Of a stretch of 7,612 nt of DNA, positions 1,282-7,560 are shown piece by piece. The position numbers were made by a program, and so were the translations under genes. The notes beneath the pieces were generated by a model, which saw only the letters and a list, made by a program, of their open reading frames with translations, did no database searches and had not been told where the DNA came from. Position 1 is the first letter of the stretch. Each line of letters opens with the position of its first letter. The stretch is from the IMG/VR virus record IMGVR_UViG_3300017469_000055, positions 1 to 7,612 of that record; one strand, 5' to 3'.

Positions 1282-1614
1282 TTATTTTTTACTTTCCCAT
1301 AAAATTTCTAGTCCTTGAATTCTATCCCATGTTATTCTTACTTTCTTTAATGTTATTTTATCATGATTATGTAAATCTCCAACATCAAATTCTACATCTA
1401 AACTTGTTTTTAAGATATGTAAAAATTTAAAATCAATATTGTTTATCAGAAAATTCATTTCTACAAGATTATCAAAATCAGAAAATGATAAATCAATTAA
1501 TGTCAAATTAGTAATATGTATATCGTATAGATTGTTCTTATATTCATAATATCTAAATTGTAGATTATTCCTCCTTAGAAAATCAAAAAGAATTTTTGCA
1601 TCTTTTACTTTCAA
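1282..1614 (-). CDS. hypothetical protein (110 aa), coupled to thyX
   Basis: TTG start overlaps the thyX stop (TTGA). AGGTGA SD lies just upstream, inside the thyX 3' end. Confidence 0.75.
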
Positions 1615-2372
1615 AATTCTTCACCTTTTTTTGAATTTTGTATACATTTATAAATTCCTTCTTTTGGAACTCCTTCTATACATCTTTTCGATATAAACTC
1701 CGTCTTCTCGTTTATTGAGTCAAGAGTTATCGGCGTGACACGTATAAAGTTCTCATGAATTATACAATTAGGTCCAGCATAACGGAATAGTCTAGGATGT
1801 ACTTTCTTCACTTCTTCGAGCATCTTCCATGCTAATTGTCGAAGTTCCCACTGAGTTCTAGAACATAAACGTAAGGCAAAGAAGTTATAAAGTTCTCTAG
1901 CATTCATGGTAACGACAATATTTGTATTTATGCCGTTTGGTAGGACGTAACGAGCATCTTCTTCTGGTACACCGGCTTCTAGGAGTTCATAATAACGTTT
2001 ATATGAATCGCTATAAGCTTTTTCTACAATTTCTTTAGCTCTTTTTTCTGTAGATGACGGTATAATTGGCTGATAATATTCTTCAATTGGTTTAGCAAAT
2101 CTATGACTCATTTGAGTATATGATGCAATTCTATGTCTTACAAGTTGATGTGAAACAACTCTAGAAATTCCTTCAATTGAGAAAGTGTATACGCTGTGTT
2201 CAAGTACAGACCAATATCCATGAATTATAGCATCAGATATCCATAGTTCTATTTCATCATCTGTCATTTTTTCTTTATGATATTCCCATCCTTTTCTTGA
2301 CCTACTCATTTTTGATGCAATAGCAATAACTTTTTCTCCGTCTGGAGTATATGAAACTAAAGTAACTTTCAT
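1611..2372 (-). CDS. thyX: FAD-dependent thymidylate synthase ThyX (253 aa)
   Basis: ThyX signature [13 protein letters not shown], plus [17 protein letters not shown] and [13 protein letters not shown]. The ATG at 2372 has an AGGAG SD upstream; the ORF-track start at 2381 is a GTG overlapping that SD. Confidence 0.95.
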
Positions 2373-2384
2373 TTTTAACACTCC

Positions 2385-2588
2385 TTATCTCCTCAATTTA
2401 GGACCTTTTTCTACCTTAATTTGTAAATTTTCCTCATTTTTCTTTTCTTCGTCGAAAAGTTTGTTTAACGCTAGTCTAATAACTTCGCCTTTTGACATTC
2501 TATGTTTTAGTCTATAGGCTTCTAGTTGTTCATACATATCTTCATCTATCTTAAACGTTACTACAATATTGCAAACTTTAGCACACAT
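2385..2588 (-). CDS. ribbon-helix-helix (CopG/aCcr1-like) transcription regulator (67 aa)
   Basis: VVTFKIDEDMYEQLEAYRLKHRMSKGEVIRLALNKL fits an RHH fold. C-terminal KVEK tail. Confidence 0.85.
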   Translation of the reverse strand: MCAKVCNIVVTFKIDEDMYEQLEAYRLKHRMSKGEVIRLALNKLFDEEKKNEENLQIKVEKGPKLRR

Positions 2589-2867: not shown

Positions 2868-2962
2868 ATTTCTCAATAAAAATGTTGTGTTATGACAAAT
2901 AAAAAGGTTTTTAAATTTGCATTTTCCATGACGAATATGTCATATTAATAATATAAGGAATA

Positions 2963-3606: not shown

Positions 3607-4914
3607 TCACTCACCTAAATTTGAAAATCTCATGAAATTGATGATTTGACTACAAATTTCTTCCTTCGTTCTCTGTCCAATTTGTATATCTATGTCAAGA
3701 GCCTGTAAGAGTATTTGTATATCTATTGCCTGTTCTTGTCTTCTAGATTCTAAGTTATCACAAATTACATAGTTATTTATACTGTTTATCTTCTGCTGAA
3801 TTAGTTCTACTAGAGCTTTCAGAATTGACGGATATAGAACTCTGGAATTTACAATTTTTTCATAAGTCTTTTTAATTGCTAATTGTATAATATGAATTCT
3901 GTCGAGAATTGCAGAAGTAAAAATTTGATAGTTTACAAGATAATCTTCTACATCTGGAGTTCTTAATCTGTTTAGAGTCATAGAATATGGATTTCCAGCG
4001 TAAATAATCGGTATACATTTCTGAATAGTTGAGGATTTTGATTCTGTTCCAGCTCCTCTGGTCCAGACACAATTTTCCAGACCAGTTGAAAGAGTGGCAT
4101 TTATTGCTCCTAATTCTTTTATGGAATATCCATCTTTCCAATTCTGAATTTCATCAAATATCAAACCATTTGACAAAAACACTGCACCATACATATTATT
4201 TCTGGCGTCATATACTAGATTTGCATATGTTGGAGTTTCTGTATAATAACGGAAATTAAATACTTCTTGTAGTATCATGAAAGTTGTAGTTTTTCCAGTT
4301 CCACGATTAGAAATTTCTATATAATTTATTTGTCTTTTCGTAATTGGGGATTTAAATAATGGGAATAATCTAGGAAGATATAGAAAGATATCTTGGATTT
4401 CCATTTTAGATGGGTCGTATCCGAAAGCTTGGAGTAGAAGAGCATATGTTTGATGTTCTTGATTAGCTAGGTCAAAAAGTTCTTTAGCAATTTCATAATT
4501 ATTCGGTGGTTCTATAGAATAAATATCGTTAATATACCATCCGTTAGACCCTTTTCTTATTTTCACAAACATAAAAGAAGTTATTAAATTATAGAAATCA
4601 TCAGGATTATCTGCTATATAATGTGGGTCAAAACTTGCTATAAACCCATTTTGAAATCTAGCAATTATTTTGTCATTTTTTACTTTAAAATTTGTTATTT
4701 TAGAGATAAATTTTATATCATCATAATATGGCAAAGTTGCTGAAAAATATTGTTGGTCTATTCCGCGTTTATAAGCTTTAAGAATTTCAATCTTTTTCTT
4801 ATCATCAATTTGTTTACCAGAAAGAATTATATTGAGAACTCTTTCTGTATCTCTCGGATTATAAAAAAAAGAATGTTCTTTAACTTTTTCAAGGAATTGG
4901 AAATTCCCATCCAT
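3607..4914 (-). CDS. AAA+ ATPase / putative helicase (SIRV2 gp18/ORF436-like; Lon/BrxL-type ATPase domain)
   Basis: Walker [10 protein letters not shown], Walker B LIFDE, sensor IIYAGN, Arg finger AILDRIH. Lies between SSB and Cas4, as in rudiviruses. Confidence 0.88.
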
Positions 4915-4939
4915 AAAAAAAATGGTATCTTATGACATT

Positions 4940-5353: not shown

Positions 5354-5513
5354 TTACATCCCCTAATTAAAATATTATATTATGACAAATTTAAATATTA
5401 ACAAACTTATAAGTTAGCATATTTTTCAATATTTTTATTATAAACACAAAAATCAATATACATTATATTTTGAATATTTGAGTTGAGAATTGAGAGATAA
5501 AAGAAAAAAAGAT

Positions 5514-5786
5514 TTAGAGTAACTTAAAGAATAGAGACCTTATCAGCCTTGGTATTTTTGTATTATATTTTCTAGCTAATTGTTCTAATTTGTCGTAGTA
5601 TAATTCGTCTACTGTAAAAAACGCTCTGCCGTCATAAACTTCTTGTTTTTCAATTAGACTGAATTCAGTTTGTTGAGAAAATATTTTATCTATTTCTTGT
5701 TTGATTTGTTCTCTTTTTTCATAAAAAATAGATTGATATTTATGTGGAATTCTTACCTCAATATATTTATTTCTTTGTCTTCTCAT
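5514..5786 (-). CDS. putative tandem RHH DNA-binding protein (90 aa)
   Basis: C-terminal half RAFFTVDELYYDKLEQLARKYNTKIPRLIRSLF is RHH-like. N-terminal half YIEVRIPHKYQ has a similar beta-strand pattern. AGGAG SD upstream, A-run (T on minus strand) at 5504-5510 downstream. Confidence 0.65.
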   Translation of the reverse strand: MRRQRNKYIEVRIPHKYQSIFYEKREQIKQEIDKIFSQQTEFSLIEKQEVYDGRAFFTVDELYYDKLEQLARKYNTKIPRLIRSLFFKLL

Positions 5787-5857: not shown

Positions 5858-6205
5858 ATGGACTGTAAAAAAGTTTTTAACTATCACTTTCTTTACAGTT
5901 ATACTTATTTTATTACAATTTCTACGAATTATCGATATGGAGATACAACAAAAATCTATAAAAAATTTCGGCAATATGTCTATAATCATGACTCAGATTC
6001 ACATGTTTTTTCTGTGAAAGAATATACAACAAAATTCCATGGGCTACATTATCATGTTCTCGTTTTTACGAATAAGAAACTTGATTATTCCAGAGTTCAT
6101 AAACATATGCCTTCTCATAGTGACATAAATATACAATTGGTTCCAAAAACAAAAAAAGATATAAAAAAAGTTTTAACTTATATGTTAAAAAATCAAAATG
6201 TCTAG
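5858..6205 (+). CDS. rep: HUH-endonuclease replication initiator Rep (SIRV1 ORF119-like)
   Basis: Motif I FITIST, motif II GLHYHVLV, motif III TYMLK with the catalytic Tyr. 115 aa, with no helicase domain. Confidence 0.92.
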   Translation: MDCKKVFNYHFLYSYTYFITISTNYRYGDTTKIYKKFRQYVYNHDSDSHVFSVKEYTTKFHGLHYHVLVFTNKKLDYSRVHKHMPSHSDINIQLVPKTKKDIKKVLTYMLKNQNV

Positions 6206-6206
6206 A

Positions 6207-6503
6207 TTATTTAGATGCTGAAGTTTGTGAATTTGTATTTTGTTCTGCTTTCTTTTGTGCTAATGAATTTACATCTCTAAGCGTATCCATATTCAGAAGT
6301 GAATTTATTCCAAGTGTAGTGGTATCTTTTAAACTTTCTGCAGTTACAATTGTAGATTTTGTCATTTGGTCGATAGCAGTTCTGAATGCCTCGTTTGTTT
6401 GTTTTTCGTTATAAAGATGTATTACTTCTCCGATTATATAACTCGTTACTAATGCTCCCATCAATACTAGAAATCCTTCATACGCATATGTTATTACAGT
6501 CAT
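6207..6503 (-). CDS. pvap: virus-associated pyramid protein PVAP (SIRV2 P98 / STIV C92 family), 98 aa
   Basis: From the ATG at 6503: N-terminal TM segment (FLVLMGALVTSYIIGEVI), then HLYNEKQ..AIDQMTKST..KDTT.GIN.LLNMDTLRDVNSLA, closely matching P98 as recalled. The ORF-track extension to 6629 is spurious. Confidence 0.92.
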   Translation of the reverse strand: MTVITYAYEGFLVLMGALVTSYIIGEVIHLYNEKQTNEAFRTAIDQMTKSTIVTAESLKDTTTLGINSLLNMDTLRDVNSLAQKKAEQNTNSQTSASK

Positions 6504-6601
6504 TTCAATTTTATATTGAACAAATTGCTTAGTAATAAATTTTCCGCAAAAATTCGAAACATATAAATATGTCATAATAAATATACATAAATTGATAAAA
6601 A
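6504..6601. promoter_or_regulatory. divergent promoter region pvap / svtR
   Basis: Minus strand: GGAAAA+TTTATTA (TATA at 6533-6539) and ATTGAA just before the pvap ATG. Plus strand: TATAAATA (6562-6569), TGTCATAA (6570-6577) and ATTGAT (6591-6596). Confidence 0.65.
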
Positions 6602-6775
6602 ATGACGGAAAAAATAAAATCTGAACCAAAATCAGAAAAAGTGGTTTTTGGAATAAATATGGACAGAAATCTCAAAATCAAACTAAAGAAATATTGTGCT
6701 GAACAAGATATAACAATTACAGAAGCTATAGAAACAGCAATTAAAGAATATCTAGAAAAGAGAGGAGTAAAATGA
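6602..6775 (+). CDS. svtR: SvtR-like RHH transcriptional repressor (57 aa: MTEKIKSEPKSEKVVFGINMDRNLKIKLKKYCAEQDITITEAIETAIKEYLEKRGVK)
   Basis: Manual translation, below the ORF-track cutoff. The VFGIxMD..LK..LK.YCA......AIE.AIKEYL.KR pattern matches SIRV1 SvtR (ORF56b) as recalled. Confidence 0.88.
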   Translation: MTEKIKSEPKSEKVVFGINMDRNLKIKLKKYCAEQDITITEAIETAIKEYLEKRGVK

Positions 6776-6948
6776 GAGTTATAACTGTGAAACTTGAAGA
6801 AGACCTTCTTAATAAACTTGACAGTTATGCTGAAAATCATAATCTTTATAGATCAGATGTTGTTAGGAATGCAATTATAGAATATCTAATGAAACATTTA
6901 GAAAATAAAGAAAATCAAGAATTAAAAGTTGAGAAAAAAGGTCTATAA
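6772..6948 (+). CDS. RHH (CopG/aCcr1-like) regulator (58 aa: MRVITVKLEEDLLNKLDSYAENHNLYRSDVVRNAIIEYLMKHLENKENQELKVEKKGL)
   Basis: Manual translation. ATGA overlap with the svtR stop, GAGGAG SD at 6762-6767, classic RHH pattern, T-tract at 6964-6970 downstream. Confidence 0.85.
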   Translation: MRVITVKLEEDLLNKLDSYAENHNLYRSDVVRNAIIEYLMKHLENKENQELKVEKKGL

Positions 6949-6963
6949 TCTTAAGTTATTAAC

Positions 6964-6970
6964 TTTTTTT
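6964..6970 (+). terminator. oligo-T terminator of the svtR-RHH operon
   Basis: T7 run 16 nt after the stop, between convergent genes. Confidence 0.5.
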
Positions 6971-6973
6971 CTT

Positions 6974-7516
6974 TTAACTTATATAATTCTTAATTTTATA
7001 TGTTTCAAATTTTGGAAGAGTCACATTATTTTGTTTTTGATATTTTCCGTGATACGGTTTCTCAACTGGAGATAATGTTTTAGCGAAAATTAGATGTAAA
7101 AATCTCTGTCCAGATTCAAGTTTTACTGGGAATTCTGACCCTACAATTTCTATCGTAAGTTGTCCTTTGAATCCCGCATCCACGATAGTTGGAGGTATAG
7201 AAATTCCTAATCTAGCATATGTAGAACGTAAATTTACAAACGCCATAATGTCATTTGGCAATTCTATATATTCGTCAGTTGTCATTAAGAGATGTTCATG
7301 TGGTTGAACTATAATGTCATTTTTATTTATAATTTCGTAAAAATCTTCTATATTATCGCCTGGTTCAAAAACTTTGTTTGTCTTTTTTAGTCTGGCAAAT
7401 TGATTTCCAATTCTTAAGTCTACACCGTTTTCTCTAACTATTTCTTCATCAAATGGTACTATTTTTATCCATTCTTTTTCTAGATAATATTTTAAATCTC
7501 TATCGCTTAAAATCAT
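6974..7516 (-). CDS. dcd: dCTP deaminase / dUTPase (trimeric dUTPase-fold, Sulfolobales Dcd-like; 180 aa)
   Basis: [39 protein letters not shown] (putative catalytic Glu present) and [15 protein letters not shown]. Confidence 0.9.
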
Positions 7517-7521
7517 ATTTG

Positions 7522-7560
7522 ATCAATCTAAAAAAACGTTTTATGACAAATATATTTCAA
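7522..7560 (-). promoter_or_regulatory. TATA+GTC rudiviral promoter of dcd
   Basis: Minus strand reads GAAATATATTTGTCATAA ... ATTGATCAAAT-ATG. Confidence 0.65.

What the first reader, a model, noticed from the sequence alone, without database searches (positions are those of the whole stretch)
6207..6948. Pyramid egress gene head-to-head with an svtR + second-RHH operon: candidate compact lysis-timing switch
Seen: pvap (6207-6503, minus) and an unannotated svtR-RHH bicistron (6602-6948, plus) share a 98-bp spacer. Their back-to-back TATA boxes are about 22 bp apart, with an imperfect palindrome AATTTTCCGCAAAAATT (6538-6554) between them. Known, from recall: PVAP alone builds the seven-sided pyramids that rupture the host. 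SvtR is an autorepressing RHH reported to repress late genes, and in SIRV1/2 these two genes are far apart. Inference: one operator could couple SvtR autoregulation to the timing of egress, possibly through an SvtR/RHH2 heterodimer, since the two genes are translationally coupled.
Basis: partly seen in the sequence, partly recalled or inferred. Interest (0 to 1): 0.75.

Follow-up and report, generated by a model that had tools for sequence, protein, structure and literature searches.

The report
Rudivirus pvap / svtR–aCcr1 divergent promoters
The pyramid-egress gene does sit back-to-back with an svtR plus second-regulator operon, but this layout is standard in Yellowstone-type rudiviruses, the second regulator belongs to the aCcr1 cell-cycle regulator family, and nothing yet shows a shared lysis-timing operator.

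Summary

It is not new. The same order and the same 98-bp spacer occur in all eight Usarudivirus genomes (SIRV4-11), in three further SIRV records and in about 20 IMG/VR contigs.

The second RHH is the positional orthologue of SIRV9 gp19. A 2023 study assigned that protein to the aCcr1 cell-cycle regulator clade, so it is not an unknown SvtR partner. It is missing from four related loci.

The most conserved part of the spacer (6561-6578, 99% identity) is the canonical rudiviral promoter, a TATA box followed by TGTCATAA. It is homologous to SIRV1 "promoter 56", the svtR promoter. Reviews report that SvtR represses this promoter, and host Sta1 bound it in pull-downs.

The proposed palindrome (6538-6554) is real, but equally good ones occur in 65% of shuffles. 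Its left arm varies among relatives, and it probably straddles the junction of two promoter modules.

A 14-bp locus-specific block (6547-6560, 90% identity) and the invariant spacing leave cross-talk between the promoters possible but untested.

Verdict: a new member of a known arrangement. The switch hypothesis remains open, and the heterodimer idea is unlikely.

The parts
5858..6205 (+). 117-like protein gene, the orthologue of SIRV1 gp09. In SIRV1/2 this gene lies directly upstream of svtR on the same strand.
   Evidence: Pfam 117-like_vir E=2.4e-48. 72% identity to SIRV1 gp09. SIRV1 gene map.
6207..6503 (-). pvap, the protein that forms virus-associated pyramids (98 aa).
   Evidence: phrog_8367 E=1.4e-46. 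58-74% identity to SIRV and STIV PVAPs. Falls in the Usarudivirus clade of the PVAP tree.
6504..6601 (.). 98-bp divergent intergenic region. Its length is invariant in the 18 canonical related loci examined (17 distinct spacers).
6533..6546 (-). Predicted pvap core promoter on the minus strand: TATA TTTATTA (6533-6539) preceded by a BRE-like GGAAAA (6540-6545).
   Evidence: AATAAA columns invariant. 82% mean pairwise identity. Resembles the pvap upstream region of SIRV1/2. The start site is not mapped, so this is an inference.
6538..6554 (.).
   Evidence: Present. Not above chance. Left arm not conserved.
6547..6560 (.). Locus-specific conserved block (consensus CAAAAAWTCRAAAY) between the two TATA boxes. 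Function unknown. It is a candidate BRE or upstream element, or a regulator site.
   Evidence: 90% mean pairwise identity against 70% for the spacer flanks. No close second copy in the window, SIRV4 or SIRV2. Duplicated on both sides of the cassette in L019.
6561..6578 (+). svtR core promoter: a TATA box followed by the rudiviral GTC element (TGTCATAA).
   Evidence: 98.8% identity across 17 distinct spacers. Conserved in SIRV1/2. The same TATA+TGTCATAA lies in front of four other genes in the window. The GTC element is described by Kessler 2004 as cited in PMC5569661.
6602..6775 (+). svtR (57 aa), an RHH transcription repressor.
   Evidence: Pfam 56B_RHH. PDB 2KEL E=1.1e-14. 54-65% identity to SIRV1/2/9 SvtR.
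6772..6948 (+). RHH2 (58 aa), an aCcr1-family RHH regulator and the positional orthologue of SIRV9 gp19. Its start overlaps the svtR stop (ATGA).
   Evidence: RHH_1 and DUF6290. 69% identity to SIRV9 gp19 over 39 of 58 residues, and 40-44% to SIRV2 gp21 and STIV A61. SIRV9 map. PMC9976892.

Best explanation
This is the standard Usarudivirus-type left-arm locus, in a new and divergent relative (about 75% nucleotide identity to SIRV4-11). Two separate core promoters lie back to back.

The + strand promoter (6561-6578) is the canonical rudiviral TATA+GTC promoter and is homologous to SIRV1 'promoter 56'. It drives a bicistronic svtR-aCcr1 message. SvtR most likely represses this promoter as a homodimer, as reviews report for SIRV1. 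The translationally coupled RHH2 would then be held to the same autoregulated level. RHH2 most likely acts on host cell-division promoters, not on the spacer.

The - strand promoter (6533-6546) has no GTC element and resembles the pvap promoter of SIRV1/2. It drives pvap on its own.

The spacer looks like a fusion of these two modules. It would have arisen when pvap, with its promoter, came to lie between the 117-like gene and svtR.

Shown: gene identities, synteny, conservation profile and promoter homology. Inferred: start sites, SvtR autorepression in this virus, RHH2 function by orthology, the fusion scenario (its direction is not determined), and the independence of pvap from SvtR.
For: Identities.

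The same gene order and 98-bp spacer occur in SIRV4-11, in OM401712-14 and in about 20 IMG/VR loci.

In SIRV1/2 the order is 117-like then svtR, with the svtR TATA+GTC promoter overlapping the end of the 117-like gene. The Usarudivirus type differs by having pvap in between.

TGTCATAA lies just after a TATA-like sequence at five promoters in the window and at most of its 11-12 occurrences in each of SIRV2 and SIRV4. The pvap promoter lacks it.

The pvap BRE/TATA resembles that of SIRV1/2.

SIRV1 promoter 56 (5547-5679) is the svtR promoter. It is weak with purified factors and is stimulated by whole-cell extract. Host Sta1 was purified by its binding to it. Reviews report that SvtR represses it.

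SIRV9 gp19 is placed in the aCcr1 branch, and its construct was among those reported to reduce transformation efficiency and slow growth.

The window contains no AGTATTA aCcr1 box.

PVAP transcripts rise steadily and the trigger for pyramid opening is unknown, so pvap transcription is not known to time lysis.

pvap is separated from svtR in Icerudivirus, SSRV1, STIV, L010 and L019.
Against: The core 6533-6578 is more conserved (91%) than either flanking coding sequence. The 98-bp length never varies. This is more constraint than two independent promoters strictly need.

The 14-bp block between the TATA boxes is locus-specific and unexplained.

The predicted footprints of the two initiation complexes would abut at about 6550, so some interference or sharing is physically plausible.

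SvtR is proposed to spread about 80 nt along DNA at gp30. That distance would reach the pvap TATA box.

No start-site, binding or expression data exist for any Usarudivirus.
Confidence: 0.6

Rival explanations
1. Shared-operator switch. SvtR binds in or near the central block, or spreads from its own promoter, and co-represses pvap and svtR. Egress gene expression would then follow SvtR level.
For: TATA boxes 22 bp apart. A 46-bp core at 91% identity and an invariant spacer length. SvtR is reported to nucleate and spread along DNA. The analogous RHH regulator AvtR protects about 100 nt between the divergent gp29 and gp30 promoters.
Against: The palindrome is not significant and not conserved. 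The published SvtR consensus is not enriched, and its best match in the spacer has 3 mismatches. No motif is shared with the upstream region of the ORF1070 orthologue, the strongest reported SvtR target. pvap works far from svtR in other viruses. The reviews read name the svtR promoter and structural-gene promoters as SvtR targets and do not mention ORF98.
Confidence: 0.2
2. Promoter-competition toggle. The two initiation complexes cannot assemble together. The svtR-aCcr1 promoter would win early. SvtR autorepression would then free the site, so pvap would rise later.
For: The predicted TBP/TFB footprints abut (an inference from the TATA positions). The spacing is invariant. SIRV2 gp21 (aCcr1) peaks early, while PVAP mRNA rises throughout infection.
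Against: This is geometry only. There are no start sites and no expression data for this virus group. In SIRV2 PVAP rises steadily without any such neighbour.
Confidence: 0.1
3. The conserved block 6547-6560 is a site for a host factor such as the Lrs14-type activator Sta1. It would serve one or both promoters and would not be a viral operator.
For: Sta1 was purified by its binding to SIRV1 promoter 56, the svtR promoter. A putative Sta1 site lies in that promoter region, and the mapped site at promoter 134 lies next to the BRE/TATA. In L019 the block is kept in front of both svtR and the pvap-side cassette.
Against: The Sta1 consensus (ATNT-N8-WNAT) is too degenerate to score in 83% A+T DNA. 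The block is not alignable with SIRV1/2 upstream of the TATA box.
Confidence: 0.15
4. SvtR and RHH2 form a heterodimer with a new DNA specificity that acts on the spacer.
For: The genes are translationally coupled by an ATGA overlap, which is conserved in 16 of 18 canonical loci. Both proteins are RHH proteins.
Against: RHH2 belongs to the aCcr1 family, whose members are predicted to homodimerise. SvtR is described as a homodimer. RHH2 is absent from L010, L018, L019 and L020. RHH2 and SvtR types assort independently. SvtR and RHH2 share only about 30% identity.
Confidence: 0.03

Closest known systems
Usarudivirus left-arm locus (for example SIRV5 gp11-gp15, SIRV9 gp16-gp19, SIRV4 gp11-gp14)
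   Same: Identical gene order and strands: 117-like (+), pvap (-), 98-bp spacer, svtR (+), overlapping RHH (+), and where present dUTPase (-). The same conserved core is present.
   Different: About 75% nucleotide identity. RHH2 here carries the long tail containing KVEK, which SIRV9 gp19 and SIRV5 gp14 lack. The variable bases of the central block differ.
SIRV1 SvtR (gp08, ORF56b, PDB 2KEL) and its 'promoter 56'
   Same: The protein is an orthologue (E=1e-14). The core promoter is homologous, with a TATA box followed by ATGTCATAAT. The upstream neighbour is the 117-like gene.
   Different: In SIRV1/2 no pvap gene lies upstream and no RHH gene lies downstream of svtR. pvap is 23-24 kb away. 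The beta-strand residue Tyr is Asn here.
aCcr1 clade (SiL_0190, SIRV2 gp21, STIV A61, SIRV9 gp19; PMC9976892)
   Same: RHH2 is a small RHH protein. It is 69% identical to SIRV9 gp19 over the aligned 39 of 58 residues and 40-44% identical to SIRV2 gp21 and STIV A61. It has chromosomal homologues in Sulfolobaceae.
   Different: Neither binding to AGTATTA nor the cell-enlargement phenotype has been tested for this protein. The window also carries a second family member (2385-2588) at the position of SIRV2 gp21.
AvtR of AFV6 and the divergent gp29/gp30 promoters
   Same: An RHH autorepressor sits next to a divergent promoter pair, and the neighbouring gene is also an RHH gene. The regulator protects the whole intergenic region of about 100 nt.
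   Different: It is a different virus family and a tandem-RHH monomer. Binding was shown for AvtR and has not been shown here. The divergent partner there is a regulator gene, not an egress gene.
STIV C92-A61 neighbourhood
   Same: The PVAP gene lies next to an aCcr1-family RHH gene.
   Different: The two genes are on the same strand with a 265-bp gap, and there is no svtR. The PVAP tree gives no support for a specific STIV-Usarudivirus exchange.

Membership tests
PVAP (SIRV2 P98 / STIV C92) | Sequence homology over the full length of about 92-98 aa | tested here: met
   phrog_8367 E=1.4e-46 over residues 1-94. 58-74% identity to known PVAPs. Clusters inside the Usarudivirus PVAP clade.
PVAP (SIRV2 P98 / STIV C92) | Hydrophobic N-terminal membrane segment followed by a conserved C-terminal domain | tested here: met
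   The N-terminal hydrophobic stretch and the conserved NMDTLRDVN block are visible in the sequences listed.
PVAP (SIRV2 P98 / STIV C92) | Self-assembles into seven-sided pyramids in membranes | not testable with these tools
   Needs expression and electron microscopy. Known for SIRV2 and STIV.
SvtR (SIRV1 gp08) | RHH fold with homology to 56B (PDB 2KEL) | tested here: met
   Pfam 56B_RHH 39.1 bits against a cut-off of 27.2. 2KEL E=1.1e-14 over residues 5-55.
SvtR (SIRV1 gp08) | Own promoter homologous to SIRV1 promoter 56 | tested here: met
   A TATA box followed by ATGTCATAAT is conserved between the window, SIRV4/9 and SIRV1/2.
SvtR (SIRV1 gp08) | Binds and represses its own promoter and structural-gene promoters | not testable with these tools
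   Reported for SIRV1 only. The published consensus does not discriminate in silico.
aCcr1 (SiL_0190 / SIRV2 gp21 clade) | Small RHH protein that clusters with SIRV2 gp21, STIV A61 and SIRV9 gp19 | tested here: met
   69% identity to SIRV9 gp19 over 39 of 58 residues, 40% to SIRV2 gp21 and 44% to STIV A61, against about 30-33% to SvtR. Positional orthologue of SIRV9 gp19. No tree was built here. The clade placement of gp19 is taken from PMC9976892.
aCcr1 (SiL_0190 / SIRV2 gp21 clade) | Cellular homologues in Sulfolobales chromosomes | tested here: met
   56-64% identity over residues 1-39 on large Sulfolobaceae, Metallosphaera and Stygiolobus contigs. Which of the five cellular branches these belong to was not resolved.
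aCcr1 (SiL_0190 / SIRV2 gp21 clade) | Binds the AGTATTA box and arrests cell division when overexpressed | not testable with these tools
   Shown for SIRV2 gp21 and SiL_0190. The SIRV9 gp19 construct was among those reported to reduce transformation efficiency and slow growth. The window contains no AGTATTA.
Shared-operator bidirectional switch | A repeat or palindromic operator between the promoters that is conserved among relatives | tested here: not met
   The palindrome 6538-6554 is at chance level, and its left arm varies. A conserved non-palindromic block (6547-6560) does exist.
Shared-operator bidirectional switch | The regulator binds the intergenic region and changes output of both promoters | not testable with these tools
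   Needs EMSA or footprinting and in vitro transcription.

The most novel reading that the evidence does not exclude
The invariant-length spacer with its highly conserved 46-bp core could be a real bidirectional control unit of Usarudiviruses. SvtR, by spreading, or competition between the two initiation complexes, would set the order of an early host cell-cycle-arrest operon (svtR-aCcr1) and the egress gene pvap. That would link cell enlargement to pyramid formation.
Probability: 0.2. Interest if true: 0.55.

Novelty: new member of a known kind. Interest (0 to 1): 0.3.

Why it matters
How archaeal lytic viruses time egress is unknown. PVAP mRNA rises gradually, and the signal that opens the pyramids has not been identified.

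If the pvap promoter in a whole genus were wired to the SvtR-autoregulated promoter that also drives a cell-cycle regulator, it would be the first defined transcriptional link between host cell-cycle takeover and egress in an archaeal virus. It could be tested in an existing laboratory system, SIRV8/9 on S. islandicus.

As it stands, the value of this work is in correcting the annotation. The 'second RHH' belongs to the aCcr1 family, the conserved sequence is mostly the ordinary rudiviral TATA+GTC promoter, and the arrangement is common rather than unique.

Tried and rejected
(1) I searched the published SvtR consensus (ATnnTTCAAnAnnnnnAAAATG, from the review PMC5569661) in SIRV1 and in the window. 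It is not enriched over shuffles. At up to 2 mismatches it finds neither the svtR nor the ORF1070 upstream region of SIRV1. It is therefore unusable as a predictor.

(2) I looked for a motif shared by the SIRV4 spacer and the 330-bp region upstream of the ORF1070 orthologue, the strongest reported SvtR target. Nothing exceeded the genome background.

(3) I looked for co-variation between SvtR beta-strand residues and the variable bases of the central block. The groups co-vary only as linked neighbours would, so the result is not informative.

(4) I treated ATGTCATAAT as a possible svtR-specific operator. This was rejected, because the same element follows the TATA box of many rudiviral genes and is the known GTC element.

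(5) I tested whether pvap and RHH2 came together from a turrivirus. The PVAP tree is an unresolved three-way split, so there is no support.

(6) The primary papers Guilliere 2009 and Kessler 2004 are not held in the library. SvtR targets and the GTC element are therefore cited second-hand from reviews.

(7) A word-indexed protein search with RHH2 returned only four close relatives and was uninformative.

(8) The heterodimer idea could not be tested by structure prediction, because only single native chains can be submitted.

Full report
**What is in the window.**
The window is IMG/VR contig UViG_3300017469_000055. It is a rudivirus fragment about 75% identical in nucleotide sequence to the Yellowstone viruses SIRV4-11.

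- ORF 6207-6503 (-) encodes a 98-aa PVAP (phrog_8367, E=1.4e-46; 58-74% identity to SIRV and STIV PVAPs).
- ORF 6602-6775 (+) is an SvtR orthologue (Pfam 56B_RHH above its cut-off; PDB 2KEL E=1.1e-14).
- ORF 6772-6948 (+) is a second RHH protein (RHH_1 and DUF6290 above cut-off). Its start overlaps the svtR stop as ATGA.
- The spacer 6504-6601 is 98 bp.

**The arrangement is common.**
RefSeq records of SIRV5, SIRV10, SIRV9 and SIRV4 show the same order: 117-like gene (+), 'pyramid forming protein' (-), a spacer of 98-101 bp as annotated, 'Arc-like repressor' (+), then a small gene overlapping it by 4 nt (+).
- BLAST places pvap and svtR side by side in all eight Usarudivirus genomes and in OM401712-14.
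- Of the 33 IMG/VR loci that encode a PVAP, 21 show pvap and svtR side by side, including the window's own contig and the three IMG/VR copies of SIRV4, SIRV5 and SIRV11. The nine SIRV1-3 and STIV-type loci show no svtR next to pvap, and one locus is truncated.
- The 18 canonical loci examined in detail have a spacer of exactly 98 bp, giving 17 distinct spacers.
- In SIRV1, SIRV2 and SIRV3, pvap lies 23-24 kb from svtR. In SSRV1 it lies beside structural genes.

That condition is met.

No paper found in the library comments on the adjacency. Bautista et al. 2017 note only that core genes are rearranged between Yellowstone and Icelandic SIRVs.

**The second RHH.**
SIRV9 gp19 (YP_009362571.1) is the gene that overlaps SIRV9 svtR by 4 nt. 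RHH2 is its positional orthologue.
- RHH2 is 69% identical to gp19 over the aligned 39 of 58 residues. It is 40-44% identical to SIRV2 gp21 and STIV A61, and about 30-33% to SvtR.
- PMC9976892 places SIRV9 gp19 in the SiL_0190/aCcr1 branch. It reports that all constructs of that branch, which included gp19, reduced transformation efficiency and slowed growth.
- For SIRV2 gp21 and SiL_0190 the same paper shows cell enlargement, extra genome copies and binding to AGTATTA in host promoters such as cdvA.
- RHH2 has 56-64% identical homologues on large Sulfolobaceae chromosomal contigs.
- The window contains no AGTATTA.
- RHH2 is missing from L018 and L020, where svtR is followed directly by the dUTPase gene, and from L010 and L019.
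- Its C-terminal tail comes in three forms that assort independently of the SvtR type.

These facts make an obligate SvtR/RHH2 heterodimer very unlikely.

**Anatomy of the spacer.**
Across the 17 distinct spacers the mean pairwise identities are as follows:

| Segment | Identity |
|---|---|
| 6504-6532 (spacer, left flank) | 70% |
| 6533-6578 (core) | 91% |
| 6579-6601 (spacer, right flank) | 71% |
| pvap coding sequence | 79% (68% in its fastest codon phase) |

Within the core:

| Sub-segment | Identity |
|---|---|
| 6561-6578 | 98.8% |
| 6547-6560 | 90% |
| 6533-6546 | 82% |

*The svtR promoter.* The near-invariant 6561-6578 is a TATA box followed by TGTCATAA.
- The same combination stands 21-34 nt upstream of four other start codons in the window (dut, the 137-aa gene, the 435-aa gene and the 95-aa gene). 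It also accounts for most of the 11-12 TGTCATAA occurrences in each of SIRV2 and SIRV4.
- This is the virus-specific GTC element that Kessler et al. 2004 described downstream of the TATA box (cited in PMC5569661).
- The element and the sequence down to the start codon align with the svtR upstream region of SIRV1 and SIRV2.
- That SIRV1 fragment (5547-5679) is 'promoter 56' of Kessler et al. 2006. It is weak with purified TBP, TFB and RNAP and is stimulated by cell extract. Host Sta1 was purified by its binding to it.
- Reviews state that SvtR represses this promoter.

*The pvap promoter.* It has no GTC element. On the minus strand, GGAAAA followed by TTTATTACTAAG resembles the pvap upstream sequence of SIRV1/2, AGAAAAC followed by TATATTATTTAG.

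*The gene-order difference.* In SIRV1/2 the order is 117-like then svtR, and the svtR promoter overlaps the end of the 117-like gene. The Usarudivirus type differs by having pvap in between.

*The likely origin of the spacer.* The simplest reading is that the spacer joins a pvap promoter module (to about 6546) to the svtR promoter module (from about 6547-6557). This junction is an inference.

**The palindrome.**
AATTTT-N5-AAAATT is present. However, 65% of dinucleotide shuffles of the spacer give an equal or better inverted repeat, and the spacer has two others of the same quality. In relatives, positions 6540-6547 read TTTTCCGC, GTTTGTGC or CTTTTCTC. The palindrome is not maintained. Only a T-tract and CAAAAA are kept.

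**What remains unexplained.**
- The block 6547-6560 (consensus CAAAAAWTCRAAAY) is conserved and has no close second copy in the window, SIRV4 or SIRV2.
- In L019 and L010, a cassette of two genes of unknown function (phrog_6678 and phrog_26913 families) separates pvap from svtR. In both loci the pvap side keeps the sequence through the old svtR TATA box. In L019 the block is repeated in front of the displaced svtR. The block therefore travels with both promoters.
- If TATA boxes sit about 26 bp upstream of start sites, the upstream edges of the two initiation complexes would meet near 6550. Interference is therefore physically possible.
- SvtR is proposed to spread about 80 nt at gp30. AvtR protects about 100 nt between divergent promoters.

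Against coupling:
- pvap functions far from svtR in other viruses.
- PVAP transcripts rise steadily, and lysis is triggered by an unknown opening signal rather than a transcriptional burst.
- None of my in-silico tests for an SvtR site was positive.

**Conclusion.**
The locus is an ordinary member of the Usarudivirus type. It has two abutting core promoters, an svtR-aCcr1 operon that is presumably autoregulated, and a separately promoted pvap.

I put 0.6 on this reading, about 0.2 on direct SvtR control of pvap, about 0.1 on a competition toggle, and 0.03 on a heterodimer. A host-factor site in the central block (0.15) is compatible with the main reading. Binding assays and start-site mapping in the SIRV8/9 - S. 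islandicus system would decide between them.

Noticed in passing
window 2890-2897, 4930-4937, 5380-5387, 6570-6577, 7541-7548: There are five exact copies of TGTCATAA. Each lies directly after a TATA-like sequence and 21-34 nt upstream of a start codon (95-aa gene, 435-aa gene, 137-aa gene, svtR, dUTPase). This is the rudiviral GTC promoter element. The pvap, 117-like and 90-aa genes lack the exact form.
   Followed up: yes
window 2385-2588 (-) and 6772-6948 (+): The window carries two aCcr1-family RHH genes. The 67-aa one sits at the position of SIRV2 gp21, after the Cas4-like nuclease and a 95-aa gene, and is 51% identical to gp21. In SIRV9 that position holds a non-RHH acidic protein (gp10).
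   Followed up: partly
L039 (STIV) 3888-4166 and 4432-4617: In STIV the PVAP gene C92 is followed on the same strand by A61, the aCcr1 homologue tested in PMC9976892. A PVAP gene and an aCcr1-type gene are therefore neighbours in two unrelated virus families. The PVAP tree does not show a specific exchange.
   Followed up: partly
L019 1175-2431 and L010 1436-3000: In two contigs a two-gene cassette of unknown function sits between pvap and svtR. It encodes a protein of about 232-240 aa (phrog_6678) plus a 64- or 188-aa membrane-like protein (phrog_26913). The junction lies right after the old svtR TATA box. In L019 the central block plus TATA+GTC is duplicated in front of the displaced svtR.
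   Followed up: partly
RHH2 orthologues in L004-L026: The C-terminal tail of RHH2 is mosaic. There is a 57-58-aa form ending in a KVEK-like motif, as in SIRV2 gp21 and STIV A61, a 52-aa form and a 48-aa form. The gene is absent from L018 and L020. The forms do not follow the SvtR type.
   Followed up: partly
window 6205-6207: The 117-like gene (+) and pvap (-) converge with a single base between their stop codons. There is no room for a terminator, so their transcripts probably overlap. The same is seen in SIRV5, SIRV9 and SIRV10.
   Followed up: no
window 5514-5786 (-); L003 (SIRV1) 6057-6302 (+): The 90-aa protein (phrog_11115) has a C-terminal end that looks RHH-like, and it corresponds in position to SIRV4 gp10, whose homologues PMC9976892 lists as a separate viral RHH cluster. 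tblastn finds a 44%-identical homologue in SIRV1 in a stretch with no annotated gene.
   Followed up: no
window 6504-6520 and 6559-6572: There are two further perfect 6-bp-arm inverted repeats in the spacer. One abuts the pvap start codon. The other spans the svtR TATA box (ACATAT-AA-ATATGT) and is largely conserved because it is the TATA box.
   Followed up: partly
window 1611-2381 (-): A ThyX-type thymidylate synthase gene (phrog_85, E=9e-62) lies downstream of the 67-aa RHH gene. Its presence in relatives was not checked.
   Followed up: no
window 6949-6973: The 25-bp gap between the converging RHH2 and dUTPase genes holds an oligo-T tract at about 6964-6975. It is a plausible archaeal terminator for the svtR-RHH2 transcript.
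   Followed up: no
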